From contig NW_027361709.1 of assembly GCF_039654945.1 (NCBI RefSeq), forward strand, positions 6,386,001-6,450,000: DNA of 64,000 nucleotides, in the 5' to 3' direction. The position numbers were made by a program, and so were the translations under genes. Positions 1 through 64,000 of this stretch are shown here, one piece after another; the stretch's first letter is position 1, and every line of letters begins with the position of its first letter. The notes beneath the pieces were generated by a model. That model was not told the DNA's origin. It saw only the letters and a list, made by a program, of their open reading frames with translations, and searched no databases. This DNA comes from Dendrobates tinctorius (lineage: Eukaryota).

Positions 1-3000
1 CTCCCTATGTACAAGAATATAACTACTATAATACTGCTCCTATGTACAAGAATATAACTGCTATAATACTGCCCCTATGTACAAGAATATAACTACTTTA
101 ATACTGCCCCTATGTACAAGAATATAACTACTATAATACTGCCCCTATATACAAGAATATATCTACTATAATACTGCTCCTATGTACAAGATGATAACTA
201 CTATAATACTGCTCCTATGTACAAGAGTATAACTACTATAATACTGCCCCTATATACAAGAATATAACTACTATAATACTGCCCCTATGTACAAGAATAT
301 AACTGCTATAATACTGCCCCTATGTACAAGAATATAACTACTTTAATACTGCACCTATGTACAAGAATATAACTACTATAATACTGCCCCTATGTACAAG
401 AATATAACTACTTTAATACTGAACCTATGTACAAGAATATAACTACTATAATACTGCCTATATATACAAGAATATATCTACTATAATACTGCTCCTATGT
501 ACAAGATGATAACTACTATAATACTGCTCCTATGTACAAGAGTATAACTACTATAATACTGCCCCCTATGTGCAAGAATATAACTACTATAATACTTCCC
601 CCTATGTACAAGAATATAACTACTATAATACTACCCCTATGTACAAGAATACAACTATTATAATACTGCCCCCTATGTACAAGAATATAACTACTATAAT
701 ACTGCTCCCTATGTACAAGAATATAACTACTATAATACTGCTCCCTATGTACAAGAATATAACTACTATAATACTGCTCCTATGTACAAGAATATAACTG
801 CTATAATACTGCCCCTATGTACAAGAATATAACTACTTTAATACTGCCCCTATGTACAAGAATATAACTACTATAATACTGCCCCTATATACAAGACTAT
901 ATCTACTATAATACTGCTCCTATGTACAAGATGATAACTACTATAATACTGCTCCTATGTACAAGAGTATAACTACTATAATACTGCCCCCTATATACAA
1001 GAATATAACTACTATAATACTGCCCCTATGTACAAGAATATAACTAATATAACTGCTATAATACTGCCCCTATGTACAAGAATATAACTACTTTAATACT
1101 GCACCTATGTACAAGAATATAACTACTATAATACTGCCCCTATATACAAGAATATATCTACTATAATACTGCTCCTATGTACAATAATATAACTGCTATA
1201 ATACTGCCCCTATGTACAAGAATATAACTACTATAATACTGCCCCTATATACAAGAATATATCTACTATAATACTGCTTCTATGTACAAGAATATAACTG
1301 CTATAATACTGCCCCTATGTACAAGAATATAACTACTATAATACTACCCCTATGTACAAGAATATAACTACTATAATACTACCCCTATGTACAAGAATAC
1401 AACTATTATAATACTGCCCCCTATGTACAAGAATATAACTACTATAATACTGCCCCTATGTGCAAGAATATAACTACTATAATACTTCCCCCTATGTACA
1501 AGAATATAACTACTATAATACTACCCCTATGTACAAGAATACAACTATTATAATACTGCCCCCTATGTACAAGAATATAACTACTATAATACTGCCCCTA
1601 TGTGCAAGAATATAACTACTATAATACTTCCCCCTATGTACAAGAATATAACTACTATAATACTACCCCTATGTACAAGAATACAACTATTATAATACTG
1701 CCCCCTATGTACAAGAATATAACTACTATAATACTGCTCCCTATGTACAAGAATATAACTACTATAATACTGCTCCTATGTACAAGAATATAACTGCTAT
1801 AATACTGCCCCTATGTACAAGAATATAACTACTTTAATACTGCCCCTATGTACAAGAATATAACTACTATAATACTGCCCCTATATACAAGAATATATCT
1901 ACTATAATACTGCTCCTATGTACAAGATGATAACTACTATAATACTGCTCCTATGTACAAGAGTATAACTACTATAATACTGCCCCCTATATACAAGAAT
2001 ATAACTACTATAATACTGCCCCTATGTACAAGAATATAACTGCTATAATACTGCCCCTATGTACAAGAATATAACTACTTTAATACTGCACCTATGTACA
2101 AGAATATAACTACTATAATACTGCCCCTATGTACAAGAATATAACTACTTTAATACTGAACCTATGTACAAGAATATAACTACTATAATACTGCCTCTAT
2201 ATACAAGAATATATCTACTATAATACTGCTCCTATGTACAAGATGATAACTACTATAATACTGCTCCTATGTACAAGAGTATAACTACTATAATACTGCC
2301 CCCTATGTGCAAGAATATAACTACTATAATACTTCCCCCTATGTACAAGAATATAACTACTATAATACTACCCCTATGTACAAGAATACAACTATTATAA
2401 TACTGCCCCCTATGTACAAGAATATAACTACTATAATACTGCTCCCTATGTACAAGAATATAACTACTATAATACTGCTCCCTATGTACAAGAATATAAC
2501 TACTATAATACTGCTCCTATGTACAAGAATATAACTGCTATAATACTGCCCCTATGTACAAGAATATAACTACTTTAATACTGCCCCTATGTACAAGAAT
2601 ATAACTACTATAATACTGCCCCTATATACAAGACTATATCTACTATAATACTGCTCCTATGTACAAGATGATAACTACTATAATACTGCTCCTATGTACA
2701 AGAGTATAACTACTATAATACTGCCCCCTATATACAAGAATATAACTACTATAATACTGCCCCTATGTACAAGAATATAACTAATATAACTGCTATAATA
2801 CTGCCCCTATGTACAAGAATATAACTACTTTAATACTGCACCTATGTACAAGAATATAACTACTATAATACTGCCCCTATATACAAGAATATATCTACTA
2901 TAATACTGCTCCTATGTACAATAATATAACTGCTATAATACTGCCCCTATGTACAAGAATATAACTACTATAATACTGCCCCTATATACAAGAATATATC

Positions 3001-4043
3001 TACTATAATACTGCTTCTATGTACAAGAATATAACTGCTATAATACTGCCCCTATGTACAAGAATATAACTACTTTAATACTGCACCTATGTACAAGAAT
3101 ATAACTACTATAATACTGCCCCTATATACAAGAATATATCTACTATAATACTGCTCCTATGTACAAGATGATAACTACTATAATACTGCTCCTATGTACA
3201 AGAGTATAACTACTATAATACTGCCCCCTATATACAAGAATATAACTACTATAATACTGCCCCTATGTACAAGAATATAACTGCTATAATACTGCCCCTA
3301 TGTACAAGAATATAACTACTTTAATACTGCACCTATGTACAAGAATATAACTACTATAATACTGCCCCTATGTACAAGAATATAACTACTTTAATACTGA
3401 ACCTATGTACAAGAATATAACTACTATAATACTGCCTCTATATACAAGAATATATCTACTATAATACTGCTCCTATGTACAAGATGATAACTACTATAAT
3501 ACTGCTCCTATGTACAAGAGTATAACTACTATAATACTGCCCCCTATGTGCAAGAATATAACTACTATAATACTTCCCCCTATGTACAAGAATATAACTA
3601 CTATAATACTACCCCTATGTACAAGAATACAACTATTATAATACTGCCCCCTATGTACAAGAATATAACTACTACAATACTGCTCCCTATGTACAAGAAT
3701 ATAACTACTATAATACTGCCCCCTATGTACAAGAATATAACTGCTATAATACTGCCCCTATGTACAAGAATATAACTACTTTAATACTGCACCTATGTAC
3801 AAGAATATAACTACTATAATACTGCCCCTATGTACAAGAATACAACTATTATAATACTGCCCCCTATGTACAGGAATATAACTACTATAATACTACCCCT
3901 ATGTACAAGAATACAACTATTATAATACTGCCCCCTATGTACAAGAATATAACTACTATAATACTACCCCTATGTACAAGAATACAACTATTATAATACT
4001 GCCCCTATATACAAGAATATATCTACTATAATACTGCTTCTAT
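1..4043. repeat. 35/36-bp AT-rich satellite (tatgtacaagaatataactactataatactgcccc[c]), left block
   Basis: Direct reading; >110 units; higher-order duplication of 1737 bp. Confidence 0.98.
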
Positions 4044-8402: not shown

Positions 8403-11400
8403 ACTGCTTCTATGTACAAGAATATAACTGCTATAATACTGCCCCTATGTACAAGAATATAACTACTTTAATACTGCACCTATGTACAAGAATATAACTA
8501 CTATAATACTGCCCCTATATACAAGAATATATCTACTATAATACTGCTCCAATGTACAAGATGATAACTACTATAATACTGCTCCTATGTACAAGAGTAT
8601 AACTACTATAATACTGCCCCCTATATACAAGAATATAACTACTATAATACTGCCCCCTATATACAAGAATATAACTACTATAATACTGCTCCTATGTACA
8701 AGAATATAACTGCTATAATACTGCTCCTATGTACAAGAATATAACTACTTTAATACTGTACCTATGTACAAGAATATAACTACTATAATACTGCCCCTAT
8801 ATACAAGAATATATCTACTATAATACTGCTCCTATGTACAATAATATAACTGCTATAATACTGCCCCTATGTACAAAAATATAACTACTTCAATACTGCA
8901 CCTATGTACAAGAATATAACTACTATAATACTGCCCCTATATACAAGAATATATCTACTATAATACTGCTCCTATGTACAAGATAACTACTATAATACTG
9001 CTCCTATGTACAAGAATACAACTATTATAATACTGCCCCCTATGTACAAGAATATAACTACTATAATACTGCTCCCTATGTACAAGAATATAACTACTAT
9101 AATACTGCCCCTATGTACAAGAATACAACTATTATAATACTGCCCCCTATGTACAAGAATATAACTACTATAATACTGCTCCCTATGTACAAGAATATAA
9201 CTACTATAATACTGCCCCTATGTACAAGAATATAACTACTATAATACTGCCCCTATGTACAAGAATACAACTATTATAATACTGCCCCCTATGTACAAGA
9301 ATATAACTACTATAATACTGCTCCCTATGTACAAGAATATAACTACTATAATACTGCTCCTATGTACAAGAATATAACTACTATAATACTGCCCCTATGT
9401 ACAGGAATATAACTACTATAATACTGCTCCCTATGTACAAGAATATAACTACTATAATACTGCCCCCTATGTACAAGAATATAACTACTATAATACTGCC
9501 CCCTATGTACAAGAATATAACTTCTATAATACTGCCCCCTATGTACAAGAATATAACTACTATAATACTGCCCCCTATGTACAAGAATATAACTACTATA
9601 ATACTGCCCCTATGTACAAGAATATAACTACTATAATACTGCCCCCTATGTACAAGAATATAACTACTATAATACTGCCCCTATATACAGGAATATAACT
9701 ACTATAATACTGCCCCCTATGTACAAGAATATAACTACTATAATACTGCCCCTATGCACAAGACTATAACTACTAAAAATACTGCTCCCTATGTACAAGA
9801 ATATAACTACTATAATACTGCCCCCTATGTACAAGAATATAACTACTATAATACTGCCCCCTATGTACAAGAATATAACTACTATAATACTGCCCCCTAT
9901 GTACAAGAATATAACTACTATAATACTGCCCCTATGTACAAGAATATAACTACTATAATACTGCCCCTATGTACAGGAATATAACTACTATAATACTGCT
10001 CCTTATGTACAAGAATATAACTACTATAATACTGCCCCCTATGTACAGGAATATAACTACTATAATACTGCCCCTATGTACAAGAATATAACTACTATAA
10101 TTACTGCCCCTATGTACAAGAATATAACTACTATAATACTGCCCCCTATGTACAAGAATATAACTACTATAATACTGCCCCCTATGTACAGGAATATAAC
10201 TACTATAATACTGCCCCCTATGTACAAGAATACAACTATTATAATACTGCCCCCTATGTACAAGAATATAACTACTATAATACTGCTCCCTATGTACAAG
10301 AATATAACTACTATAATACTGCCCCTATGTACAAGAATACAACTATTATAATACTGCCCCCTATGTACAAGAATATAACTACTATAATACTGCTCCCTAT
10401 GTACAAGAATATAACTACTATAATACTGCCCCTATGTACAAGAATATAACTACTATAATACTGCCCCTATGTACAAGAATACAACTATTATAATACTGCC
10501 CCCTATGTACAAGAATATAACTACTATAATACTGCTCCCTATGTACAAGAATATAACTACTATAATACTGCTCCTATGTACAAGAATATAACTACTATAA
10601 TACTGCCCCTATGTACAGGAATATAACTACTATAATACTGCTCCCTATGTACAAGAATATAACTACTATAATACTGCCCCCTATGTACAAGAATATAACT
10701 ACTATAATACTGCCCCCTATGTACAAGAATATAACTTCTATAATACTGCCCCCTATGTACAAGAATATAACTACTATAATACTGCCCCCTATGTACAAGA
10801 ATATAACTACTATAATACTGCCCCTATGTACAAGAATATAACTACTATAATACTGCCCCCTATGTACAAGAATATAACTACTATAATACTGCCCCTATAT
10901 ACAGGAATATAACTACTATAATACTGCCCCCTATGTACAAGAATATAACTACTATAATACTGCCCCTATGCACAAGACTATAACTACTAAAAATACTGCT
11001 CCCTATGTACAAGAATATATCTACTATAATACTGCCCCCTATGTACAAGAATATAACTACTATAATACTGCCCCCTATGTACAAGAATATAACTACTATA
11101 ATACTGCCCCCTATGTACAAGAATATAACTACTATAATACTGCCCCTATGTACAAGAATATAACTACTATAATACTGCCCCTATGTACAGGAATATAACT
11201 ACTATAATACTGCTCCTTATGTACAAGAATATAACTACTATAATACTGCCCCCTATGTACAGGAATATAACTACTATAATACTGCCCCTATGTACAAGAA
11301 TATAACTACTATAATTACTGCCCCTATGTACAAGAATATAACTACTATAATACTGCCCCCTATGTACAAGAATATAACTACTATAATACTGCCCCCTATG

Positions 11401-11860
11401 TACAGGAATATAACTACTATAATACTGCCCCCTATGTACAAGAATATAACTACTATAATACTGCCCCCTATGTACAGGAATATAACTACTATAATACTGC
11501 TCCCTATGTACAAGAATATAACTACTATAATACTGCTCCCTATGTACAAGAATATAACTACTATAATACTGCCCCTATGTACAAGAATATGACTACTATA
11601 ATACTGCCCCCTATGTACAAGAATATAACTACTATAATACTGCCCCCTATGTACAAGAATATAACTACTATAATACTGCTCCTATGTACAAGAATATAAC
11701 TACTATAATACTGCCCCCTATGTACAAGAATATAACTACTATAATACTGCTCCTATGTACAAGAATATAACTACTATAATACTGCCCCCTATATACAAGA
11801 ATATAACTACTATAATAGTGCTCCTATGTACAAGAATATAACTACTATAATACTGCCCTA
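8403..11860. repeat. Same 35/36-bp satellite, continuation after the L2 insertion
   Basis: Direct reading; contains a 1214-bp internal duplication. Confidence 0.98.
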
Positions 11861-14507: not shown

Positions 14508-15648
14508 GGACGGAGGTGACGGCGGCAGCACGCTGATGGCACCACCTGGTGGCAGCAGCCGTAATAACACCGCAGCTTCTGTTGGGAAACCGCTCGGCCT
14601 CATGTCCATGGACCATTGTATTCTTCTTTCTGCAAGTTGCAGTATCCTGTACGGTCAATCCTGATATAAAGCCGACATTGTCTCTTGCTGGCGGCTGTGT
14701 TCACTTTTAATATCAAGAATAAACCTGCAGCTCATGGCTCCTGCCAATAAAACGGGAGTGCAGCTGCACAGGACGATGTATTCGCCTGCACTATACGCAG
14801 CCAGGACATGGCACCGAGCCCCTTAATCAGTAGAGGTACAGGGGGGGGGGGGGGGGGGGATGACGGACTGCAGGAGAGAAGATGCAGTCCTGCAAACCTC
14901 CACTCATCACAGCCACCACTAGGGGGAGCTCAATGCATCCAGACTGCAAGAGGCTACAGGACCAGTAATACTTCTCTGCGAGCCCCTTCTTACATATTAG
15001 GGCCCACATGCAGGATTAGTGCAGGAAAAGGCAGACCGGGACATTACTTGGGGGTTCAGACTTTACTTACCATCTATTTCCAGTGGCGCTGCTCTGCAGC
15101 ACTGCTGATTTAATACTTCCCCCGCATGAACCCCCATTATATACTATAGAATTTCCTGTAACATAATGAGGGGAATATCCACCACCTCTATGGGGCTCAG
15201 GAGATACAACATGGCCTCAAGTTGGTTCCCTACAAGTTAAAATAGTGCGTTAATGCTGCGGCCACTAGGGGGAGCTCCCTACATCCAAGTAACACCAGCT
15301 CTGTAGATCTACGGGCAGGGAGCTCCCCCTAGTGGCGGATGGAGGGAAATATAATATACAGTAAATCTTTTGGTCCGGAGTTGAGGATCACAAGGACGTA
15401 TGTACACAGAAAATTTTAGGGAACACAGATCTTTGCCAAATTCCAGGAAATGCCAGTCTCCCAAAAAAAAAAAAGCATCAGCCGTACATAGAAGCGTATG
15501 CAGAGGGGGATGCAGCTGCAATCAATACATAATGGTAAATTGCCCTTGGTGCCTTCCTTTCTCACTTTCTGGAGAAGTTTCCAATAGCTGATGCTGGTAA
15601 AGATGGACACATGCAGAGATCGGAGGCTCGGGTATCCACAATCCCTTC

Positions 15649-16375: not shown

Positions 16376-28056
<11,681 letters not shown>

Positions 28057-28437
28057 GGCCGGAGAGCGGAGGATGGAGGCGGATACAGGAGGAGGAGAGC
28101 CCGCAGCCACGGAGAGAGCGCGGCCTCTGCTGCTGACGGCTCATTCATCCGCGGGGACAAGATGGCCGCCCAGGACCCCGCTGCCGAGCGACGGGAGGGT
28201 GACCTGGACACTGCCTGACAGGACGGAGCGTGTCCGGAGGCCTCCTCTGCCCCTGTACAGACACTGTGTGAACTGCACCGTGCGTATGGAGACAGCACAC
28301 AAAGACGCATCATCCGTCACAGCTGGAGCGAGTGCTGTGTAATAACTACATTGATATAATACAGGCAAAAAACGGGACAGCTCAGACCACAGAGAGAAGG
28401 AGCGTCCATAGCGACAGAAAGGAGGAGGAGCCCGCGG
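28057..28437 (-). promoter_or_regulatory. rpn1: rpn1 5'UTR and CpG-island promoter with a YY1-like motif (CAAGATGGCCGCC, 28158-28170)
   Basis: CpG-rich, TATA-less sequence immediately upstream of the ATG; near-match to the YY1 consensus CAAGATGGCGGC. Confidence 0.55.
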
Positions 28438-31400
28438 ACACAGCGCCACCTACCGAGCGCACGGCGACACCTACCGTGTACACAGCGACACCTACCGTGT
28501 ACACAGCGACACCTACCGAGCAAACAGCGACACCTACCGAGCATACAGCGCCACCTACCGAGCAAACAGCGACACCTACCGAGCACACAGCGCCACCTAC
28601 CGAGCACACAGCGCCACCTACCGAGCACACAGCGCCACCTACCGAGCACACAGCGACACCTACTGTGTACACAGCGCCACCTACCGAGCAAACAGCGACA
28701 CCTACCGAGCACACAGCGCCACCTACCGAGCACACAGCGCCACCTACCGAGCACACAGCGCCACCTACCGAGCACACAGCGACACCTACCGAGCATACAG
28801 CGCCACCTACCGAGTAAAAAGCGCCACCTACCGAGCACACAGCGCCACCTACCGTGTACACAGCGCCACCTACCGAGCACACAGCGACACCTACCGAGCA
28901 CACAGCGACACCTACCGTGTACACAGCGACACCTACCGAGCAAACAGCGCCACCTACCGAGCACACAGCGACACCTACCGAGCATACAGCGACACCTACC
29001 GAGCACACAGCGCCACCTACCGAGCACACAGCGCCACCTACCGAGCACACAGCGCCACCTACCGAGCACACAGCGCCACCTACCGAGCATACAGCGCCAC
29101 CTACCGAGTAAAAAGCGCCACCTACCGAGCACACAGCGCCACCTACCGAGCACACAGCGACACCTACCGAGCACACAGCGACACCTACCGTGTACACAGC
29201 GCCACCTACCGAGCAAACAGCGCCACCTACCGAGCATACAGCGCCACCTACCGAGTAAAAAGCGCCACCTACCGTGTACACAGCGCCACCTACCGAGCAC
29301 ACAGCGCCACCTACCGAGCACACAGCGCCACCTACCGAGCATACAGCGCCACCTACCGAGTAAAAAGCGCCACCTACCGTGTACACAGCGCCACCTACCG
29401 AGCACACAGCGACACCTACCGAGCACACAGCGACACCTACCGTGTACACAGCGCCACCTACCGAGCAAACAGCGCCACCTACCGAGCACACAGCGACACC
29501 TACCGAGCACACAGCGACACCTACCGTGTACACAGCGCCACCTACCGAGCAAACAGCGCCACCTACCGAGCACACAGCGACACCTACCGAGCAAACAGCG
29601 ACACCTACCGAGCATACAGCGCCACCTACCGAGCAAACAGCAACACCTACCGAGCACACAGCGCCACCTACCGAGCACACAGCGCCACCTACCGAGCACA
29701 CAGCGACACCTACCGAGCACACAGCGACACCTACTGTGTACACAGCGCCACCTACCGAGCAAACAGCGACACCTACCGAGCACACAGCGCCACCTACCGA
29801 GCACACAGCGCCACCGACCGAGCACACAGCGACACCTACCGAGCACACAGCGACACCTACCGAGCACACAGCGACACCTACCGAGCATACAGCGCCACCT
29901 ACCGAGTAAAAAGCGCCACCTACCGAGCACACAGCGCCACCTACCGTGTACACAGCGCCACCTACCGAGCACACAGCGACACCTACCGTGTACACAGCGC
30001 CACCTACCGAGCAAACAGCGCCACCTACCGAGCACACAGCGCCACCTACCGAGCACACAGCGACACCTACCGAGCACACAGCGACACCTACCGTGTACAC
30101 AGCGCCACCTACCGAGTAAACAGCGACACCTACCGAGCACACAGCGCCACCTACCGAGTAAAAAGCGCCACCTACCGTGTACACAGCGCCACCTACCGAG
30201 CACACAGCGCCACCTACCGAGCACACAGCGCCACCTACCGAGTAAAAAGCGCCACCTACCGAGCAAACAGCGACACCTACCGAGCACACAGCGCCACCTA
30301 CCGAGCACACAGCGCCACCTACCGAGCACACAGCGCCACCTACCGAGCACACAGCGACACCTACCGAGCAAACAGCGACACCTACCGAGCACACAGCGCC
30401 ACCTACCGAGCACACAGCGCCACCTACCGAGCAAACAGCGACACCTACCGAGCACACAGCGCCACCTACCGAGCACACAGCGCCACCTACCGAGCACACA
30501 GCGCCACCTACCGAGCAAACAGCGACACCTACCGAGCACACAGCGACACCTACCGAGCACACAGCGCCACCTACCGAGCACACAGCGACACCTACCGAGC
30601 ACACAGCGCCACCTACCGAGCACACAGCGACACCTACCGAGCATACAGCGCCACCTACCGAGTAAAAAGCGCCACCTACCGAGCACACAGCGACACCTAC
30701 CGAGCACACAGCGACACCTACCGAGCACACAGCGACACCTACCGAGCACACAGCGACACCTACCGAGCACACAGCGACACCTACCGAGCACACAGCGACA
30801 CCTACCGAGCATACAGCGCCACCTACCGAGTAAAAAGCGCCACCTACCGAGCACACAGCGCCACCTACCGTGTACACAGCGCCACCTACCGAGCAAACAG
30901 CGCCACCTACCGAGCACACAGCGACACCTACCGTGTACACAGCGCCACCTACCGAGCAAACAGCGCCACCTACCGAGCACACAGCGACACCTACCGAGCA
31001 CACAGCGACACCTACCGTGTACACAGCGCCACCTACCGAGTAAACAGCGACACCTACCGAGCACACAGCGCCACCTACCGAGTAAAAAGCGCCACCTACC
31101 GTGTACACAGCGCCACCTACCTAGCACACAGCGCCACCTACCGAGCACACAGCGCCACCTACCGAGTAAAAAGCGCCACCTACCGTGTACACAGCGCCAC
31201 CTACCGAGCAAACAGCGACACCTACCGAGCAAACAGCGACACCTACCGAGCACACAGCGCCACCTACCGAGCACACAGCGCCACCTACTGTGTACACAGC
31301 GCCACCTACCGAGCACACAGCGCTACCTACCGAGCACACAGCGCCACCTACCGAGCACACAGCGACACCTACCGAGCACACAGCGACACCTACCGAGCAC

Positions 31401-32502
31401 ACAGCGCCACCTACCGAGCATACAGCGCCACCTACCGAGTAAAAAGCGCCACCTACCGAGCACACAGCGCCACCTACCGTGTACACAGCGCCACCTACCG
31501 AGCAAACAGCGCCACCTACCGAGCACACAGCGACACCTACCGTGTACACGGCGCCACCTACCGAGCACACGGCGACACCTACCGAGCAAACGGCGACACC
31601 TACCGAGCAAACGGCGACACCTACCGAGCACACGGCGACACCTACCGAGCAAACGGCGACACCTACCGAGCACACGGCGCCACCTACCGAGCACACGGCG
31701 CCACCTACCGAGCACACGGCGCCACCTACCGAGCACACGGCGCCACCTACCGAGCAAACGGCGACACCTACCGAGCACACGGCGACACCTACCGAGCACA
31801 CGGCGACACCTACCGAGCACACGGCGACACCTACCGAGCACACAGCGCCACCTACCGAGCAAACGGCGACACCTACCGAGCACACGGCGCCACCTACCGA
31901 GCAAACGGCGACACCTACCGAGCAAACGGCGACACCTACCGAGCACACAGCGACACCTACCGAGCACACGGCGCCACCTACCGAGCACACGGCGCCACCT
32001 ACCGAGCACACGGCGACACCTACCGAGCACACGGCGACACCTACCGAGCACACGGCGACACCTACCGAGCACACGGCGCCACCTACCGAGCACACGGCGA
32101 CACCTACCGAGCACACGGCGACACCTACCGAGCACACGGCGACACCTACCGAGCACACGGCGACACCTACCGAGCACACGGCGACACCTACCGAGCACAC
32201 AGCGCCACCTACCGAGCAAACGGCGACACCTACCGAGCACACGGCGCCACCTACCGAGCAAACGGCGACACCTACCGAGCAAACGGCGACACCTACCGAG
32301 CACACAGCGACACCTACCGAGCACACGGCGCCACCTACCGAGCACACGGCGCCACCTACCGAGCACACGGCGACACCTACCGAGCACACGGCGACACCTA
32401 CCGAGCACACGGCGACACCTACCGAGCACACAGCGCCACCTACCGAGCACACGGCGACACCTACCGAGCACACGGCGACACCTACCGAGCACACAGCGCC
32501 AC
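28438..32502. repeat. 21-bp minisatellite (acacagcgccacctaccgagc and variants), ~190 units, immediately upstream of rpn1
   Basis: Direct reading; variants gcc/gac, agca/tgta, caaa/taaaa; switch to cggcg after ~31550. Confidence 0.98.
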
Positions 32503-33438
32503 ACAGCCCTGCCCTCCACATACATTTGGCTAGGCTCACATTAGCACAGCGTATCGTCTGCATGCGCAAACGCATGTCAAAACGCATAGAAACACGTTTA
32601 CGCAGCGTTTTCTATCCGCATCAGCTTATGCATGACGGTAAAAAAACGCTGCGTTTGAGGTTTTTTTTACAGCGCATGCGTTTGGAGAATTTTCTTGACA
32701 CAAGCCACACCCAATGAGCGTGTCTCATTTCCCGGACATGATTATGTGAAAAACGCATGCGTGCCCATAGACAGTAATGCATTTTTTCTACGCACTCATC
32801 CGCATGCGCATATTTGACCGTTTTTTGCCGCAACAAAAAATGCAACATGTTGCGTTCGCTGAATCCCGCCGCACACCGCGAAACGACGCATGCGTACGTT
32901 TTCATGCCCCTGCAGACACCATGTTAAAGAAAGTAAAACACCAGATCCTAATGCTAATTAAAGCCAAGATCAGCCACAGAGCATTCAATGGTAAAATCAC
33001 TTTTATTAGTTCACATATAGAATGTAAAAAATACTTTTTTTGTCTGCAAAAAGGTACAAGAAAGAGAAGAACATAAGGCTCCCATTAATATGAAGATTGC
33101 TGCATGGCTCTGGACCATATGACTACAATTCATGAAAAATACCATCCAGGATAACAATAGTTAAACAGACCGCTATGTAATGGTGCACATAATGAATAAC
33201 TATGGCTACAACCGCCAAATAAGTTTACCAAGAGAAAGCACCAGACACTGCTGTGACTGTGAGGGCTGCGAGCACCCACTACACCCTAGCAGCGACCGCT
33301 AATTAGCCATAGTATACAGCAGAGAGCTCCGAGAGCTGCACATTTGTAAGGAATGCTGTCTCATCATGATTGGAGCCACAAGGGCCACTACCTGGATCCT
33401 AGCAGCGTTTAGTGTATATGCAGTGGGAGCCCGGTCCT

Positions 33439-33480
33439 ACAGCCCCGACGCGCACGTTTCGCCCTGCTTCCTCGGGGGGG
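33439..33480 (-). ncRNA. Hammerhead-ribozyme-like motif (Penelope-type, variant core CCGAGGA)
   Basis: Minus strand CCCC-CCGAGGA-AGC AGG GC-GAAA-C GTGCGC GTC-GGGG: core, short stem II, GAAA, GUC triplet, stem I CCCC/GGGG. Confidence 0.5.
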
Positions 33481-33733
33481 CGTGTCTAAGCGAAGGGTGT
33501 GTGAGGTTTAAATATGAGTCACAACCAATCAACCGGGTTTCTTGATTACTACAGTCTGGGATAGCTCCATGGCGCATGCGTCGACCGCCCGACGCTCATA
33601 GTTAACAGATATGAAGCCGCGGTCACGATGAGTCACTCGCCGCCCTCCACGCCCCATCACATGGTACAGAGCGAGTCAAGCCAGCGTATAATTTATATGT
33701 AGCAGTATCACCTATACATTGTATATGCATGTA

Positions 33734-33820
33734 TACCGTATTTTTCGGACCATAAGACGCACTTTTTTCCCCCAAAATTTTGGGGGAAGTGGGGGGGTGC
33801 GTCTTATGGTCACAGTATAC
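33734..33820 (+). mobile_element. Terminal fragment of a non-autonomous Tc1/mariner (Tc2/pogo-like) element
   Basis: TA|CCGTATTTTTCGGACCATAAGACGCAC with internal inverted gtgcgtcttatggtc; second terminus not identified. Confidence 0.45.
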
Positions 33821-34413
33821 TTCCTTGTGACCATGGCTGGTGCGGGTGCCGCGGGGCTCTGTGGTGCGGTGGTGGCAGCGGGCTGTGCTCCAGTGCAGGG
33901 GTAGCGGCTCTCTGTGCTCCGTGGGGGGTTCCGCCGGCATTTCCTCGAAGCCCGGAGGCCCCCGCACATCCGCTGCTGGCCGCCGCCATGTTGCTGTGGC
34001 CTCCGGGAACATGGACGCCGGGAAGATGGCCGCCGGTCCGGGGACGGCGCATGCTCAGGTTCAGATCTCGTTGCCGAGATTTGAATCTCATTAATTAATG
34101 AGCATTTGCACTTTTGTATTTTGTCTGGGGTTTTGGAACCTTAAATATTGAATTGTATGTGATTATGACCCAATTTTCTTTGTTCATTTTCTAATGTCTG
34201 CTTTTATACAGACTTTTTAAATTGTTTTTAACCCTGTGTTTGTATGTAGTGTTTGCTGAAATTAAATAAAATATATTTTTGTATTATAAATATTGGTGGT
34301 GATCCCTATAGTTGTTGCATATACTTTTTCTTGGTCTGTTTCTATATAGTCTTATATGCATTGGGAGATCCCACATATGGTATTATTTGAGATGGTGCCC
34401 GTTTACCCCATTG

Positions 34414-37400
34414 TGTTCCAGAATCATACATCCGTCACCATTCACACATAGCAGTATAGTCTATACTAGCGCATGGCAGAATGGCCATGCGCGCTTTTTA
34501 TAGCAGCCGGGACCTTCCGGAAGCTTCCAGATCTCCGAGATGGACCAATGAGATCTGGAGCAGGACCTGAGCACATGACTCCCAATCTCCAATGGGAAAC
34601 CATCTCATGAGCATGCCCAGTAGGAGGACAGAGGGACTTAGCCCCTGGAGAGATTAGCTGCAAGGCAATCTCCTCTGCGGTAGATAAAGAGCAAGAGACC
34701 GCAGAATGTGAGGGTCTGGATTCCTGCAGAGCAGATGCAGGAACCTGACTCCTAACATTACCCCCCCTCCTCTCTGAGCCTTCCAATCCACCACCCTGTG
34801 CCCATCAGAGGCATAGGCCTCAGACTCGTCCGAAGGCAAGTCTGATGTCCCGGTAGGTGACACGGAAAATCGGGACATGTGGAAGGTATCAGAGGCGGCA
34901 AGATCGCCAGGTTTAAGAAGGGACACGTGGGAGACAACGGGAGCGGCAAAACCGCCCGGAGCATAAGTTGAAGTGGGACGCCGAAGTGTGTCGGCCAACG
35001 TCTCCACTCTCTGTTTAAGGAAGCTTACCCGAGCACATGAGGCGCATGCCTGAATATATTTCTTAATGTCCCGAGCCCTGTGCGGCCACCAATACGACCC
35101 TGCCAGGAGTTTTGTGGTCTGCATGTAGCCACAGTGACCACCTGCCCTGGACACGTGTGCCCACGCGAGGACCTTCGGCCGAAGGCGACGGGGGGCAAAG
35201 GTCTTGCCCGGCGGCACAGAGTTTGGCCATTAAAAACACATGTGACATGCACAAGTGTGAACAAGTCGGTAAGACAACATTCACACCACCCACTGAGACA
35301 CAACAAGAAAACAGATCTGTTTTCTTGTTGTGTCTCAGTGGGTGGTGTGAACGTTGTCTTACCAACTTGTTCACACTTGTGCATGTCACATGTGTTTTTA
35401 ATCCGTTTTTTCCTTGCCTAGCATGGTTTGAGAGACCCCACCCCTCTCGTGTGGCATGCACAAAAGAGCTGTCTTGCACCACAAGCCCATACTAAGAAGC
35501 GCCTGTCCGAATCCTGTTCATTTTAGACACTGTTCAGATGTTCAGGTTTTAAATACATTAGATAGGGACTGCTTCAATACGGGTTACCTTGACGTGGTGA
35601 AGCAGCTTGATATACATTTTTTTGCAAAAAAACGTATCGACTAAATACCCTGTATTTGTTATCCAGCACTTGCTGATTACTGTCATGTATTTTACTGCAG
35701 AGTATTTTTGCAAATCTGTTTTCTTGTTGTGTCAGAGTTTGGCCAATGCAGGGCCCCGTTATCCTGGTGAACAGAGTGCTGACAGTGGCAGCCGCAATAA
35801 GAACTTAGTGTCGGACGCGCCTCGAGACTGGCGCGAGACACCTCCATGGGCTCTGGGAGTGAACACTCTGGCTCGGGTGATTCCAGAGGCTCAAAGAGGT
35901 TGGGAGCCGGAGTAACCTTCCGTCTGGATTGAGCACGCTCCAGCCCGCGCTCCGAAAAACAGAGATCAATACGGGTGGCAATGACAATCAGCTCCTCCAG
36001 ACTTGCAGGAACCTCTCTGGTAGAAAGAGCATCCTTAACATGCTCAGCTAAACCTCTCCAAAACACAGGGATGAGGGCTTTGTCAGAACACTCCAGCTCG
36101 GAAGCCAGTGTGTGAAGACGAACGGCATACTGACTAACCGAGAGGGATCCCTGAGTCAAAGCCAGTAGCAGTAGAGAGGTGTCGTGCGTGACCCGTGGTC
36201 CCAGGAAGACCTGCTTAATAGCTGTTAAAAACTGAGCAGTGGTCCGAACCTCTGGGTCACCACGCTGTCATAGTGGCGTAGCCCACTCCAACGCCTTGCG
36301 CCACAGAAGGGAAACAATACACCCCACCTTGGCCCGCTCCGTAGGGAATCGCGCAGCCAGTAACTCCAGCTGGATAGAGCACTGGCTGACGAAACCCCTA
36401 CAGGAGGCCATTGCCAGAAAATTTATCGAGCAACGGGAGGCAGGTAACTGTTGGCGCGTCGGAGGACGTGGACATATGAGAAACCGCCTCTGCGATCGCC
36501 TGTACAGCAGCCTCCGAAGACTTCACCTCTGCGATGACACTCTCAAGAGTAGCCAACCGGCCCTCTAGCTGGCGAATGCACTGAAGGAGTTGCTGCTGAT
36601 CTGCCATCACTAGCCAGACCCTGGTGCTAGTAAAATGTTCGGAACGGCGGAACGCACTAAATAAAAATAATAATAAAGTGCGTTCACCGCTCGGGGTCCA
36701 CCGTGCAGTAGGTGATATAACCGCTGCTGAGTAATGGCAGACGAGCATTATGGCGATATAATGCGCACGGGTTCAACTTCACCCGAAGTGCGCAGAGCGG
36801 GCTCTGTTCACACACAGAGGCGCCGCAACATAAACATACAAAAGGCTGAGCCTGTTAGAGTCACAGGCCTCAGGTAAATGCACACACGGTATAAGGTCAC
36901 AGGAGCAGGAACTAAGACAGAGGGGCTGCGTCCGTCTAGACCTACCGTGTGTGCGGCGTCGCTACTGCGAACGCCAAGAAGGGCTGCAACTGCAGCGCGG
37001 CGCAGGACACTGCCGCTGGACGACACAGCAACAAAGCAGCCGCTATGTCGGACGCTAGCGCAGAGGTGCGGTGTGCACAGTGGCCTAAGGCTTGCCACAG
37101 ACTGGCGCAGACTACTGAACTAATTCCCTAACCACATGCGTAATATCAGAGGGAAGGGGTTTCATAATAAGTCAGTCACCAGAATTATACATCCGTCACC
37201 ATTCACACATAGCAGTATAGTTTATACTAGCGCATGGCGGAACGGCCATGCGCGTTTTTTAAAGCAGCCGGGACCTTCCAGAAGCTTCCAGATCTCCAAG
37301 ATGGACCAATGAGATCTTGAGCAGGACCTGAGCACATGACTCCCGATCTCCAATGGGAAACCGTCTCATGAGCATGCTCAGTAGGAGGCCAGAGGGACTT

Positions 37401-51714: not shown

Positions 51715-52155
51715 CCCACGGTCTAAGTGGACTGACCTTAGCTGTCATAGAACCCTATGGAAATGTAGGGTGGTCTCACATGCACAATGGGGGTGTTCAA
51801 GTTCTGAGCCCCCAAATAGAGAATCACCGCTATATAAGTGGGCTTAACTCAGATATCATGGAAGCTTATGGAGATCTAGGCTTATCTTTCTAGCACAAGG
51901 GGGCTGTCCAGAATCTGAGAACATAACAGAATCCCCCACGATTGAAGTGGACTGACCTTAGCTACCATATAACCCTATGGCAATCTAGGTTGTGCTCACT
52001 TGTACAATGGGGGTGTCCATGTTCTCAACCCCAATACAGAACCCCCATCATTCAAGTGGACTGTGCTTAGATACAGTAATAATCTATGGCAACCAAGGTT
52101 CATCCCACTTGCACAATGGGGGTGTCCAGGTGCTGCGCCCCAATACAGACTATTA
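51715..52155. repeat. Degenerate ~109-bp tandem repeat x4 just upstream of the rab7a promoter
   Basis: 'aagtgg' anchors at ~51726, 51836, 51945 and 52054 with shared downstream ...atgg...caatgggggtgt. Confidence 0.75.
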
Positions 52156-52294
52156 TCTCACACTGGCTACTCCCGACAGACCCCGACTCGTCACTCTACA
52201 TAATAGCAGACTCCAATCACAGCCGAGTATATCCATCCGCAGACACACACGACCACCCACCCTCTCCCCGATCTATAAAGCAGCACCTCGCCTC

Positions 52295-52430
52295 AGGTAA
52301 CATGGCGGAGTGAAAGTGACACAGCACGTCAGGTGACCAGCCGTGACCCCGCCTCCTTCTCCACATCTACCAATGGGCGTGAGGGAATAGCCTGTGACGT
52401 CAGCAGTCCCATGACTGGTTATCACTTCCG
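52295..52430 (+). promoter_or_regulatory. rab7a: rab7a promoter: YY1-like AACATGGCGG (52299), CLEAR-like GTCAGGTGAC (52328), GC box CCCCGCCT (52347), CCAAT (52370), CRE TGACGTCA (52395), ETS CACTTCCG (52423)
   Basis: Dense cluster of housekeeping motifs at the 5' edge of a CpG island, followed by a strong splice donor. Confidence 0.7.
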
Positions 52431-52547
52431 CTGGGAAGAGAAGGGCTGGCAGGGAGGAAGCTGAGAGAAGCAGCGGAGAGGGCCCGGCGGAGCACAGGAG
52501 CGGCCCGGCACACGAGCGCACACCCAGCAGCCACCTACTCACCGCGG
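52424..52547 (+). other. rab7a: rab7a non-coding exon 1 (TSS approximate)
   Basis: Begins near ACTTCCGCT (resembles the human RAB7A 5' end as recalled) and ends at donor CGG|GTAAGG (52548). Vertebrate RAB7A has an untranslated first exon and a long intron 1. Confidence 0.65.
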
Positions 52548-52869
52548 GTAAGGCGAGCGCCTCCTCCCGGGAGGGTGACACCGAGCACCGCGGCGGGAGG
52601 GGAGGCCGCATCCTGGTGGACGACCCCCGTGGAGGCCTGAGAGAGGAGCGGAGGCCCAGGGCGGGGAGACCCCACTACAGAGCCGCTCTCAGCCCCGTTA
52701 TCCCGGGACACTCCACGGAGATCCACGCCCGGCACCGAGAGTGTCCGGTATCCTGCCCCAACCGTGACCGCTGAGGAGCGGGGGAGGGGCCGACAACTGC
52801 TCAGCTGGACCGCAGGGAAGGGTGTCAGTGCGGCCACACAGCCAGCAACATGTGCGGTAACAACTGCGG

Positions 52870-55318
52870 TAATACTGCCCCTATACACAGGAATATACCT
52901 ACTATAATACTGCCCCTATACACAGGAATATACCTACTATAATACTGCCCCTATACACAGGAATATACCTACTATAATACTGCCCCTATACACAGGAATA
53001 TACCTACTATAATACTGCCCCTATACACAGGAATATACCTACTGTAATACTGCCCCTATACACAGGAATATACCTACTGTAATACTGCCCCTATACACAG
53101 GAATATACCTACTATAATACTGCCCCTATACACAGGAATATACCTACTGTAATACTGCCCCTATACACAGGAATATACCTACTATAATACTGCCCCTATA
53201 CACAGGAATATACCTACTATAATACTGCCCCTATACACAGGAATATACCTACTATAATACTGCCCCTATACACAGGAATATACCTACTGTAATACTGCCC
53301 CTATACACAGGAATATACCTACTATAATACTGCCCCTATACACAGGAATATACCTACTATAATACTGCCCCTATACACAGGAATATACCTACTATAATAC
53401 TGCCCCTATACACAGGAATATACCTACTATAATACTGCCCCTATACACAGGAATATACCTACTATAATACTGCCCCTATACACAGGAATATACCTACTAT
53501 AATACTGCCCCTATACACAGGAATATACCTACTATAATACTGCCCCTATACACAGGAATATACCTACTGTAATACTGCCCCTATACACAGGAATATACCT
53601 ACTATAATACTGCCCCTATACACAGGAATATACCTACTATAATACTGCCCCTATACACAGGAATATACCTACTATAATACTGCCCCTATACACAGGAATA
53701 TACCTACTATAATACTGCCCCTATACACAGGAATATACCTACTATAATACTGCCCCTATGCACAGGAATATACCTACTATAATACTGCCCCTATACACAG
53801 GAATATACCTACTATAATACTGCCCCTATACACAGGAATATACCTACTATAATACTGCCCCTATACACAGGAATATACCTACTATAATACTGCCCCCTAT
53901 ACACAGGAATATACCTACTATAATACTGCTCCTATGTACAAGAATATACCTACTATAATACTGCTCCTATACACAGGAATATACCTACTATAATACTGCC
54001 CCTATACACAGGAATATACCTACTATAATACTGCCCCTATACACAGGAATATACCTACTATAATACTGCCCCTATACACAGGAATATACCTACTATAATA
54101 CTGCCCCTATACACAGGAATATACCTACTATAATACTGCCCCTATACACAGGAATATACCTACTATAATACTGCCCCTATACACAGGAATACACCTACTA
54201 TAATACTGCCCCTATATACAGGCATATACCTACTATAATACTGCCCCTATACACAGGAATATACCTACTATAATACTGCCCCTATGTACAAGAATATAAC
54301 TACTATAATACTGCCCCTATGTACAAGAATATAACTACTATAATACTGCCCCTATGTACAAGAATATAACTACTATAATACTGCCTCCTATGTACAAGAA
54401 TATACCTACTATAATACTGCCCCTATACACAGGAATATACCTACTATAATACTGCCCCTATACACAGGAATATACCTACTATAATACTGCCCCCTATACA
54501 CAGGAATATACCTACTATAATACTGCCCCTATACACAGGAATATAACTACTATAATACTGCTCCTATATACAAGAATATAACTATTATAATACTGCTCCT
54601 ATGTACAAGAATATAACTACTATAATACTGCCCCCTATGTACAAGAATATAACTACTATAATACTGCCCCCTATGTACAAGAATATAACTACTATAATAC
54701 TGCCCCCTATGTATAAGAATATAACTACTATAATACAGCCCCTATGTACAAGAATATAACTACTATAATATTGCCCCCTATGTATAAGAATATAACTACT
54801 ATAATACAGCCCCTATGTACAAGAATATAACTACTATAATACAGCCCCTATGTACAAGAATATAACTGCTATAATACTGCCCCCTATGTACAAGAATATA
54901 ACTACTATAATACTGCCCCCTATGTACAAGAATATAACTACTATAATACTGCCCCCTATGTACAAGAATATAACTACTATAATACTGCCCCCTATGTACA
55001 AGAATATAACTGCTATATTACAGCCCCTATGTACAAGAATATAACTGCTATAATACTGCCCCCTATGTACAAGAATATAACTGCTATAATACTGCCCCCT
55101 ATGTACAGGAATATAACTGCTATAATACAGCCCCTATGTACAAGAACATAACTACTATAATACTGCCCCTATGTACAAGAACATAACTACTATAATACTG
55201 CCCCCTATGTACAAGAATATAACCACTATAATACTGCTCCTATGTACAAGAATATAACTACTATAATACTGCTCCTATGTACAAGAATATAACTACTATA
55301 ATACTGCCCCCTATATAC
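52870..55318. repeat. 35/36-bp satellite (same family as 1-11860) in rab7a intron 1
   Basis: Starts as variant tatacacaggaatatacctactataatactgcccc and converts to the canonical unit after ~54280. Confidence 0.98.
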
Positions 55319-62626: not shown

Positions 62627-62679
62627 ATGACGTCCAGGAAGAAAGTGCTTCTGAAGGTCATCATCCTGGGAGACTCCGG
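62627..62679 (+). CDS. rab7a: Ras-related protein Rab-7a, first coding exon (exon 62610-62679; gene continues beyond the window)
   Basis: Polypyrimidine tract + ttcacag| then tttgaaagATG; encodes MTSRKKVLLKVIILGDSG (Rab7 N-terminus and start of the P-loop GDSGVGKT); donor GG|gtgagt at 62680; 53 coding nt. Confidence 0.95.
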
Positions 62680-62833
62680 GTGAGTGCGAGCCGCCTGTGA
62701 CCCTTGTCTGCACAAGATGGGAAAGCTGCGGATTTTACCTGCAGATAAAATCCACAGGCGAGAGGGTGGTTTTACGGATCACAGTGCTGTGGAAGGTTTC
62801 TACTTGGGATCATCCTGCTGTGCGGATGTCTAA

Positions 62834-63727: not shown

Positions 63728-64000
63728 AATCTACAACACATCAAAGATCCCCCTCACTGTATAGCACATTATTTGACATCTTGGAGATGTTGCACTTTTA
63801 TATTTTGTGGAATGTGCAACAAGTGAGAACTGAGATTGTTCCGATAACTTTTCTTCCCTACAAGGTTTACCTTATAGATTACATCTTTGGCAATTTGGTC
63901 CTAGATTTGGGGTTATGAAACTTGATAGACGTCTGCTGCCGCTCCGCTTTGTGAAATAGACTGGATGGGGTAAACCCCAACATATCAGAATTCCCCTCGA

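What the first reader, a model, noticed from the sequence alone, without database searches (positions are those of the whole stretch)
28438..32502. ~190-unit tandem array of co-oriented CTCF-like motifs abutting the rpn1 promoter: a possible satellite-built insulator or loop anchor
Seen: the common 'gcgccacc' unit reads T-CGGTAGGTGGCGCT-GTG on the minus strand. This matches the CTCF core consensus CCASYAGRKGGCRSY (allowing G at position 3) except at the first base. The other main variant ('gcgacacc' -> AGGTGTCGC) breaks the GGC core, so the array is a binary string of intact and broken sites, all in one orientation. It starts <400 bp from the rpn1 ATG. The most promoter-proximal unit is an intact variant with a slightly divergent flank, as if a single promoter CTCF site had been amplified. 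Each motif contains CpGs. Known: CTCF-bearing macrosatellites (DXZ4, FIRRE) anchor very long loops, CTCF binding is CpG-methylation sensitive, and the human RPN1/RAB7A interval borders the GATA2 regulatory domain. Inference: a copy-number- and methylation-tunable boundary between rpn1 (and the gata2 side) and rab7a.
Basis: partly seen in the sequence, partly recalled or inferred. Interest (0 to 1): 0.8.

Follow-up and report, generated by a model that had tools for sequence, protein, structure and literature searches.

The report
Promoter-side minisatellite with CTCF-like units
A frog has about 194 head-to-tail copies of a 21-base unit just upstream of the housekeeping gene rpn1, and each unit moderately resembles the docking site of the genome-folding protein CTCF. 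This genome is full of such repeats, a match this good is expected a few times by chance, and nobody has tested binding.

Summary
Window 28438-32502 is a 21-bp x 193.6-copy array with no indels. It starts 382 bp from the rpn1 ATG and about 277 bp upstream of the 5'-most RNA-supported base.

On the minus strand the main unit scores 12.7 bits (p=1.3e-5) against the CTCF matrix and the 'gac' variant 9.3 bits. All 188 hits lie on the minus strand. The two core CpGs fall exactly on CORE positions 2 and 12.

The match is only moderate. The ZF7 triplet reads TCG, not CCA, and no unit carries the consensus C at core position 1.

A random 21-mer unit reaches this score in 0.05-0.17% of trials. With 37% of this window in tandem arrays and 785 windows scanned, several such arrays are expected by chance. 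The scan has already noted about nine CTCF-like arrays elsewhere in this genome.

A relative's DNA contig carries the conserved flank followed by about three units. The units therefore predate that species split, and no single-copy founder was seen.

Most likely this is a GC-rich promoter-flanking minisatellite with an incidental or weak CTCF core. A methylation-gated, one-directional cohesin barrier facing rpn1 remains possible (about 0.3). Binding, methylation and insulation are untested.

The parts
28438..32502 (-). 21-bp minisatellite of 193.6 units. The CTCF-like core TCGGTAGGTGGCGCT reads on the minus strand in every unit.
   Evidence: TRF; in-register unit table; PWM scan with 188 minus-strand hits.
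28438..31545 (-). Promoter-proximal subdomain of 148 units, with ACAGCG-type spacers and interspersed gcc/gac/GTGT/GAGTAA variants.
   Evidence: Variant map and column counts.
31546..32502 (-). Distal subdomain of about 45.6 units. Most units are the ACGGCG type, which adds a third CpG per unit. It contains a 14-unit block duplicated at a lag of 17 units.
   Evidence: The same G-for-A change recurs in organism C contigs, at 28589 in 8 contigs and 28610 in 12.
28162..28437 (.). Unique 276-bp spacer between the rpn1 5' end and the array. It is conserved in relative B at about 91% identity.
   Evidence: X7 record 24 spans 28251-28497. It has no other copy in the window.
27835..28161 (-). rpn1 exon 1, with the ATG at 28056-28054 and a GTCAGT splice donor below 27835.
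   Evidence: Spliced RNA contigs X8 record 26 and X14 record 2; ORF translation [10 protein letters not shown]...[13 protein letters not shown]; donor checked.
25835..27355 (.). Second GC-rich (about 80% GC) minisatellite, with 29/44-bp units, in rpn1 intron 1. It brackets the promoter on the other side and has no CTCF-like match (best -1.6 bits).
   Evidence: TRF, composition, PWM.
14537..15338 (.). Cluster of strong canonical CTCF motifs just 3' of rpn1: 14537 minus strand 20.0 bits, 14913 plus 18.9, 15259 plus 21.1, 15320 minus 19.6. The plus-strand sites are convergent with the array.
   Evidence: PWM scan, sequence, rpn1 C-terminal exon at 16379-16600.
62627..62680 (+). First coding exon of rab7a (MTSRKKVLLKVIILGDSG). 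It marks the gene on the far side of the array.
   Evidence: Six-frame peptide search.

Best explanation
This is a lineage-restricted, GC- and CpG-rich minisatellite lying against the upstream edge of the rpn1 CpG-island promoter.

It grew by in-register replication slippage and unequal exchange. This is inferred from the absence of indels, the interspersed variant map and the duplicated multi-unit blocks. The genome makes such arrays in great numbers, and here they bracket CpG-island promoters. Amphibians appear to lack PRDM9, so recombination is expected to target promoter-like features; a link from that to array formation is inference.

The unit's G-rich strand carries a real but only moderate match to the CTCF core. 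This match is most likely incidental, and at most supports weak or conditional CTCF occupancy. On this reading the array has no dedicated boundary function.
For: Array anatomy: 193.6 units, 0 indels and 23 variants with no regular higher-order period. A 14-unit block is duplicated at lag 17.

Arrays are commonplace here. 37% of the window is tandem array. rpn1 is flanked on both sides (25835-27355 and 28438-32502), and the CpG island at 52151-52900 lies between arrays at 51725-52149 and 52870-55315.

Chance level: 0.05-0.17% per 21-mer unit. Over the thousands of arrays implied by 785 scanned windows, this predicts several hits of this quality. About nine CTCF-like arrays have been noted so far.

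Motif weakness: mismatches at matrix positions 3, 4 and 6 cost 2.2, 2.7 and 1.8 bits. None of 193 units has C at core position 1, although that would give 17.2 bits. 85 units also carry G-to-T at core position 11.

About half of the rare unit variants are CpG transitions, and the major ACGG-to-ACAG difference is also a CpG-to-CpA change. This hints at some germline methylation.

Motif-rich human alpha-satellite higher-order repeats gave no significant CTCF DiMeLo-seq signal (10.64898/2026.07.18.739380). PRDM9 was not found in the amphibians sampled (PMC5519329).
Against: - The match is far better than composition-matched shuffles.
- The near-invariant block of the unit (columns 6-18, apart from column 9) coincides with the informative core positions.
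- Both core CpGs fall exactly on CORE positions 2 and 12.
- CpG observed/expected in the array is 1.1-1.37, with no depletion, and the array is contiguous with the promoter island.
- Relative B keeps intact units at the same junction (13.0 bits).
- Strong convergent partner motifs lie just beyond the rpn1 3' end.
- About 100 moderate sites in 4 kb could give substantial collective occupancy.
Confidence: 0.55

Rival explanations
1. The array is a CTCF platform. When the TCGG CpG (CORE position 2) is unmethylated, CTCF occupies a subset of units, and steric exclusion is likely at 21-bp spacing. All molecules would point their N-termini toward rpn1 and stall cohesin arriving from the rpn1 side. 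Pairing with the convergent plus-strand sites at 14.9-15.3 kb would enclose rpn1 in a loop of about 13-17 kb. Unit number, gcc/gac composition and methylation would tune its strength.
For: - PWM 12.7 bits, p=1.3e-5, with 188 co-oriented hits.
- The score is reached by only 0.05% of shuffles.
- CpGs sit at CORE positions 2 and 12; methylation at 2-3 inhibits binding, while 12-13 is tolerated (PMC10484683).
- CTCF base-contacting residues are conserved across vertebrates (PMC10484683).
- Convergent CTCF motifs lie at Xenopus TAD borders (PMC8270788).
- CpGs are not depleted, and the array adjoins a CpG-island promoter.
- Units are kept in relatives B and C.
- Convergent motifs of 18.9 and 21.1 bits lie 3' of rpn1.
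- Precedents: DXPas34 (PMC3149622) and the SLC6A4 VNTRs (PMC2848977).
Against: No binding, methylation or contact data exist. The ZF7 triplet is degenerate (TCG for CCA). No unit has moved toward the consensus at core position 1. Neither the upstream motif nor the downstream GAG motif is present (sequence inspection against PMC10484683). Genome-scale chance expectation covers a hit of this strength. The CpG-transition signature among variants hints at methylation. Motif-bearing satellites can be unbound.
Confidence: 0.3
2. The array is bound by a different sequence-specific factor that reads the invariant GCG(C/A)CACCTACCG block. Candidates would be a lineage-specific zinc-finger protein, or a CACCT/AGGTG-reading factor such as the ZEB/SNAI or T-box classes. 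It would then act as a promoter-upstream regulatory or silencing VNTR.
For: A 13-bp near-invariant block sits within an otherwise variable unit. The 'gac' variant reads AGGTGTCG, which partly resembles a T-box half-site AGGTGTGA (from memory, not scanned against a motif library). Array-matching contigs appear at low depth in RNA-seq runs.
Against: No motif library was available, so nothing was tested. Invariance in a young homogenised array needs no selection. The ZEB/SNAI core CAGGTG is not present (the unit has TAGGTG).
Confidence: 0.08
3. The array is a coding or formerly coding repeat (a 7-residue TAPPTEH mucin-like repeat on the plus strand), or else an assembly artefact.
For: The 21-bp unit equals 7 codons. 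Two plus-strand frames are open along all 4065 nt, and two minus-strand frames carry only one stop each.
Against: The Pro/Thr-rich frame has 15 in-frame stops. Open frames are automatic for a unit that lacks stops in that frame. RNA depth on the array is 2-9, against 209 on rpn1 exon 1, and no spliced contig was seen. Against an artefact: array 31-mers occur in runs from 3 studies of organism A, and array-like contigs occur in relatives B and C.
Confidence: 0.03

Closest known systems
Mouse DXPas34 (minisatellite at the Tsix major promoter)
   Same: It is a CpG-rich minisatellite with a short monomer (30-34 bp) beside a promoter. Each monomer is reported to hold a CTCF site, and CpG and CTCF-site content vary between related species (PMC3149622).
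   Different: DXPas34 has a few dozen units and experimental CTCF binding (as cited in PMC3149622). This array has 194 units of 21 bp at a housekeeping gene in a frog, has no binding data, and its core matches less well.
Human SLC6A4 promoter VNTR (5-HTTLPR, 22-23 bp units) and Stin2
   Same: They are short-unit VNTRs, one lying 5' of a promoter, reported to be regulated by CTCF. Allele length and composition matter (PMC2848977).
   Different: Those VNTRs have about 9-16 copies. This array has about 194. No allelic or functional data exist for it.
DXZ4, FIRRE and ICCE macrosatellite superloop anchors
   Same: They are tandem, co-oriented CTCF motifs. The effects of Dxz4 on contacts depend on its orientation (PMC3491370, PMC6125249, 10.1101/165340).
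   Different: Their units are kilobases long, with one or a few CTCF sites each, so bound molecules are well spaced. Here sites recur every 21 bp, and neighbouring sites probably exclude each other. The defining kb-scale unit is not met.
GC-rich, strand-asymmetric hypervariable minisatellites (Jeffreys type)
   Same: Unit length is tens of bp. One strand is G-rich. Variants are interspersed and growth is in register. The unit's AGGTGG...GC flavour resembles the classical minisatellite core (from memory).
   Different: Copy-number polymorphism and meiotic instability were not testable here. The resemblance to the classical core is partial.
Other CTCF-like arrays noted in this same genome (TERF2, a protease intron, HGD intron 1, DARS2 intron 8, acadm upstream, CD19/RABEP2)
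   Same: They are co-oriented tandem arrays of CTCF-like units, tens to hundreds of copies long (earlier AI notes).
   Different: Three of those follow-ups report a single-copy founder site in other frogs. No founder was found here. Those notes are unchecked, and I did not re-test them.

Membership tests
CTCF binding site (core motif) | Match to the 15-19 bp core matrix at a conventional threshold (p<1e-4 or p<1e-5) | tested here: met
   The main unit scores 12.7 bits, p=1.3e-5. The gac unit scores 9.3 bits, p=6.6e-5. There are 188 hits at p<1e-4.
CTCF binding site (core motif) | Consensus CCA triplet read by ZF7 (core positions 1-3) | tested here: not met
   The units read TCG (170 units) or ACG (23). 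None has C at position 1, and only 3 have A at position 3. CG at positions 2-3 does occur in the bound H19 sequence (PMC10484683).
CTCF binding site (core motif) | Occupancy by CTCF in vitro or in vivo | not testable with these tools
   No ChIP, CUT&RUN, DiMeLo or EMSA data were available.
CTCF binding site (core motif) | Unmethylated cytosine at core position 2 | not testable with these tools
   A CpG is present at positions 2-3 in 190 of 193 units. Its methylation state is unknown.
CTCF loop anchor or insulator | Convergent partner motif and a contact or insulation signal | tested here: inconclusive
   Convergent plus-strand motifs of 18.9 and 21.1 bits lie at 14913 and 15259. No Hi-C data were available.
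Minisatellite / VNTR | Head-to-tail units of 10-100 bp with interspersed variants | tested here: met
   Period 21, 193.6 copies, 23 variants, no regular higher-order period.
Minisatellite / VNTR | Copy-number polymorphism between individuals | not testable with these tools
   Only short contigs were available. Array 31-mers occur in 3 studies of organism A, but allele lengths cannot be read from them.
DXPas34-type promoter minisatellite of CTCF sites | CpG-rich short monomers, each carrying a CTCF-type site, adjacent to a promoter | tested here: met
   There are 2.2 CpG per unit with observed/expected 1.1-1.37. Each unit has a core match. The array starts 277 bp from the RNA-supported 5' end. 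This is met at sequence level only.
Macrosatellite CTCF anchor (DXZ4 type) | Kilobase-scale monomer | tested here: not met
   The unit is 21 bp.
Dispersed satellite or TE-borne repeat | Further copies elsewhere | tested here: inconclusive
   The window holds no other copy of the unit or its flanks. Source-sample runs hold only 0.22-0.27 of the array words, against 0.55 for the flank, which argues against high genomic abundance. The whole genome was not searchable.

The most novel reading that the evidence does not exclude
In poison frogs, CTCF-type sites may be recurrently amplified into dense, co-oriented arrays. On this reading, the rpn1 array is a working example at a housekeeping promoter. 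It would be a methylation-gated, one-directional cohesin barrier whose 21-bp period equals the seven triplets covered by ZF1-ZF7, so that CTCF molecules could pack unit by unit on one face of the helix. Together with the convergent strong sites 3' of rpn1, it would wrap the gene in a private loop.
Probability: 0.12. Interest if true: 0.7.

Novelty: new member of a known kind. Interest (0 to 1): 0.35.

Why it matters
If CTCF does bind, the array would offer about 100 moderate, identically oriented, CpG-gated sites at 21-bp spacing next to a constitutive promoter. That would be a natural test of three questions:

- how site number, spacing and methylation set the strength of a cohesin barrier;
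- how densely CTCF can pack;
- together with the other arrays noted in this genome, whether CTCF sites are themselves prone to tandem amplification.

If CTCF does not bind, the array is a useful negative control. It shows that a significant PWM match inside a minisatellite is expected by chance in repeat-rich genomes and should not be read as an insulator.

Tried and rejected
- **Whole-array read laying.** I used the proximal junction with about 10 units instead. The distal junction and array length in relatives were therefore not examined.
- **Array 31-mers in relatives.** They were found only in organism A runs. At 80% likeness, however, relatives B and C do show tandem units, so 'species-specific array' was rejected.
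- **Rfam.** A scan of the whole window gave no family at gathering score, so the array is not a known RNA element.
- **Other copies.** BLAST of the unit and both flanks against the window found none. TE-borne origin is neither supported nor excluded.
- **Coding reading.** Rejected: 15 in-frame stops in the Pro/Thr frame.
- **Higher-order repeat.** Rejected: there is no lag with elevated unit identity apart from local block duplications.
- **gDNA carry-over as the source of array contigs in RNA-seq.** This looks unlikely. Depth is 4-9 on 31-mers present 18-38 times in the array. Strand and origin of this RNA remain unknown.
- **The D. tinctorius genome paper.** It does not mention tandem or satellite repeats.
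- **Orthologous site in Xenopus or other frog families.** No vertebrate genome collection was available.
- **Motif library scan for rival factors.** No library was available.
Full report
**1. The observation**

Tandem Repeats Finder reports an array at 28438-32502 with period 21, 193.6 copies, 91% matches and no indels. Cutting the stretch every 21 bases keeps perfect register for all 4065 bases. This gives 193 full units and a 12-nt stub, in 23 variants.

Only six of the 21 columns vary in more than three of the 193 units (columns 2, 4, 5, 9, 19 and 21). Columns 6-18 (GCG[C/A]CACCTACCG) are otherwise almost invariant. Column 9 splits the units into 108 'gcc' and 85 'gac', interspersed roughly at random (runs test z=-2.1).

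There is no regular higher-order period. Recurrent short variant strings and a 14-unit block duplicated at lag 17 show growth by multi-unit slippage or unequal exchange.

Two subdomains exist. The proximal 148 units carry ACAGCG. Most of the distal 45.6 units (31546-32502) carry ACGGCG, which adds a third CpG.

**2. The motif**

Its column sums of 908-913 and its consensus TGGCCACCAGGGGGCGCTA look right, but it should be re-checked against the database.

- The minus strand of the main unit, TGCTCGGTAGGTGGCGCTG, scores 12.7 bits (p=1.3e-5).
- The gac unit scores 9.3 bits (p=6.6e-5).
- The plus strand scores below zero.
- The array holds 188 hits at p<1e-4, all on the minus strand. The remaining 60 kb holds 20 hits, against about 12 expected.
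- None of the 11 other array consensus units tested in the window exceeds 3.2 bits.

The 3' two-thirds of the core (AGGTGGCGCT) is consensus-perfect. The losses are at matrix positions 3, 4 and 6 (-2.2, -2.7 and -1.8 bits). So the triplet read by ZF7 is TCG instead of CCA.

'Broken' is too strong for the gac variant, which loses 3.4 bits but still passes p<1e-4.

**3. Is it more than chance?**

For one 21-mer unit taken alone, yes. Composition shuffles reach 12.7 bits in 0.05% of trials. First-order Markov units reach it in 0.06-0.15%, and natural 21-mers of the window in 0.17%.

The relevant universe is much larger, though. 37% of this window is tandem array, in 12 listed arrays. The scan has read 785 windows of this genome. 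If other windows hold even half as many arrays, several arrays at this score are expected with no biology behind them.

The scan's own notes list about nine CTCF-like arrays so far. That count is of the same order as the chance expectation. Those notes are unchecked AI notes and I did not re-test them. They set a base rate and give no support.

**4. Context**

The ORF at 27781-28110 on the minus strand begins [10 protein letters not shown]... and continues [21 protein letters not shown]. By my knowledge of the protein this is ribophorin I. Further rpn1 exons run down to the C-terminal ...[10 protein letters not shown] at 16379-16600.

Laying contigs of four public runs on 27400-28640 showed spliced rpn1 mRNA contigs:

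- organism A: X8 record 26, depth 209;
- organism C: X14 record 2, depth 277.

Their 5' ends lie at 28161 and 28150. Contigs cannot prove a transcription start, but the array begins at least 277 bp upstream of the transcribed region and 382 bp from the ATG.

The first coding exon of rab7a (MTSRKKVLLKVIILGDSG) is at about 62627 on the plus strand.

CpG observed/expected is 0.8-1.1 over the promoter and intron-1 array, 1.1-1.37 over the 21-bp array, and 1.2-1.4 for another 500 bp beyond it. The array is thus part of a CpG-rich block of about 7 kb.

**5. Relatives**

Exact 31-mers of the array were found only in runs labelled organism A, from three studies. At 80% likeness the picture changes.

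- A 252-nt DNA contig of organism B (X7 record 24) aligns from the unique flank at 28251 across the junction to 28497, which covers the first 2.9 units or so, at 91.5% identity. Its second unit is an intact gcc unit (13.0 bits).
- Organism C has 51-80-nt contigs made of tandem units, mostly of the ACGGCG type.

Tandem units therefore already stood at this junction before organisms A and B diverged. No single-copy state was seen.

Testing it needs more distant frogs, which no tool here could supply.

**6. What speaks for a CTCF function**

- The mammalian CTCF motif is found in convergent orientation at TAD borders in Xenopus tropicalis (PMC8270788). The base-contacting residues of ZF4 and ZF7 are conserved across vertebrates (PMC10484683). 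The matrix therefore applies to frogs.
- The 15-bp core of the unit, TCGGTAGGTGGCGCT, has CpGs exactly at CORE positions 2-3 and 12-13. In the H19 sequence, full methylation at 2-3 inhibits CTCF binding, while methylation at 12-13 is tolerated or slightly favourable (PMC10484683). Methylation gating is thus plausible if binding occurs at all.
- ZF1 lies at the 3' end of the motif strand (PMC10484683). By established knowledge, the CTCF N-terminus is the side that stalls cohesin. The motif strand here is the minus strand, so the array would stop cohesin coming from the rpn1 side.
- Canonical plus-strand motifs of 18.9 and 21.1 bits lie at 14913 and 15259, about 1 kb beyond the end of the rpn1 coding sequence and convergent with the array. 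A private rpn1 loop of about 13-17 kb is therefore geometrically possible. This is inference.

**7. What speaks against**

- The ZF7 triplet is degenerate.
- None of 193 units has the consensus C at core position 1, although that single change would raise the score to 17.2 bits. Adding A at position 3 would raise it to 20.7 bits. Selection for strong binding would be expected to favour such variants.
- Neither the 3' GAG triplet for ZF1 nor an upstream motif is present (my inspection against PMC10484683).
- At 21-bp spacing, neighbouring sites probably exclude each other. ZF1-ZF7 alone cover seven triplets, which is exactly one unit, and ZF3-ZF11 were crystallised on 35 bp (PMC10484683).
- About half of the rare unit variants are CpG transitions. 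The main ACGG/ACAG difference is also a CpG-to-CpA change, with the CpG form predominant in organism C. These are small numbers, but they hint that the array has been methylated in the germline.
- Motif-rich human alpha-satellite higher-order repeats show no significant CTCF DiMeLo-seq signal (10.64898/2026.07.18.739380). Motifs in satellites are therefore not a proxy for binding.

**8. The rival mutational explanation**

Lying beside a promoter is not distinctive in this genome. rpn1 is bracketed by a second, unrelated array with 80% GC in intron 1 (25835-27355). The other large CpG island of the window (52151-52900) lies exactly between arrays at 51725-52149 and 52870-55315. An earlier first-reader note on another window says the same of three promoters; I confirmed the pattern only for this window.

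PRDM9 was not found in the amphibians sampled, and species without it direct recombination to promoter-like features (PMC5519329). Recombination-associated instability at CpG-island promoters is thus a plausible generator of GC-rich, strand-asymmetric minisatellites. This is inference and was not tested.

**9. Other readings**

- The plus-strand TAPPTEH frame has 15 in-frame stops, so a coding repeat is rejected. The frames that stay open do so simply because the unit lacks stops in them.
- Rfam finds nothing in the window.
- Array-matching contigs appear at depth 2-9 in RNA-seq runs of organisms A and C. This is too much for DNA carry-over, given a 31-mer multiplicity of 18-38. Per copy it is still only about 0.1% of rpn1 exon-1 depth. 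So there is low-level transcription of unknown strand and origin.

**10. Comparison with known systems**

The closest precedents are:

- mouse DXPas34, a CpG-rich 30-34-bp minisatellite at the Tsix promoter in which each monomer is reported to hold a CTCF site (PMC3149622);
- the human SLC6A4 VNTRs, reported to be regulated by CTCF (PMC2848977).

DXZ4-type macrosatellites share co-orientation but not the unit scale. The kind is therefore known. At sequence level this array would be a very large new member of that kind, with membership in the functional sense untested.

**11. Verdict**

| Reading | Probability |
|---|---|
| Promoter-flanking minisatellite with an incidental or weak CTCF-like core | 0.55 |
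| Methylation-gated, one-directional CTCF barrier | 0.30 |
| Platform for another DNA-binding factor | 0.08 |
| Coding repeat or assembly artefact | 0.03 |

Interest is 0.35.

Noticed in passing
window 14537-15338: Four strong canonical CTCF motifs (19-21 bits) lie within 800 bp, about 1 kb beyond the rpn1 stop codon. They include an inverted pair at 15259 (plus) and 15320 (minus), 42 bp apart, that share CCACTAGGGGGAGCTC. The first motif directly follows the 3' end of an L2-like element, which is repeated at 63623-63728.
   Followed up: partly
window 25835-27355: A minisatellite with 80% GC and 29/44-bp units (CCGTCCGCCACCAGCTCCCGCTGCCCCC) fills much of rpn1 intron 1, right after exon 1. It has no CTCF-like match.
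   Followed up: partly
window 51725-55315: The CpG island at 52151-52900, a possible rab7a promoter (not verified), lies exactly between a 109-bp x 3.9 repeat and a 35-bp x 69.5 array. This repeats the 'promoter bracketed by arrays' pattern seen at rpn1.
   Followed up: partly
window 32520-32900: The distal flank of the array has only 46% GC but CpG observed/expected of 1.2-1.4. It is studded with ACGCATGCG(T/C) palindromes that look NRF1-like (from memory). It has no other copy in the window. Relatives and small RNA-seq runs hold part of the words of 32503-35500.
   Followed up: partly
window 3-4037, 8403-11858, 52870-55315: Three arrays of 2.4-4 kb are built from related AT-rich 35/36-bp units (CTATGTACAAGAATATAACTACTATAATACTGCCCC and a variant). 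Together with the 37-, 32-, 27- and 43-bp arrays, 37% of the window is tandem repeat.
   Followed up: no
window 28440-28640: Short contigs that match the array, some exactly, occur at depth 2-9 in RNA-seq runs of organism A (X8, X6) and organism C (X14). The unique spacer 28198-28407 has no RNA depth. This suggests low-level array transcription of unknown strand and start.
   Followed up: partly
window 28086: The rpn1 5'UTR carries an AGG or AGGAGG insertion polymorphism in a GGA-rich stretch. It appears in RNA contigs of organism A and in the DNA contig of organism B.
   Followed up: no
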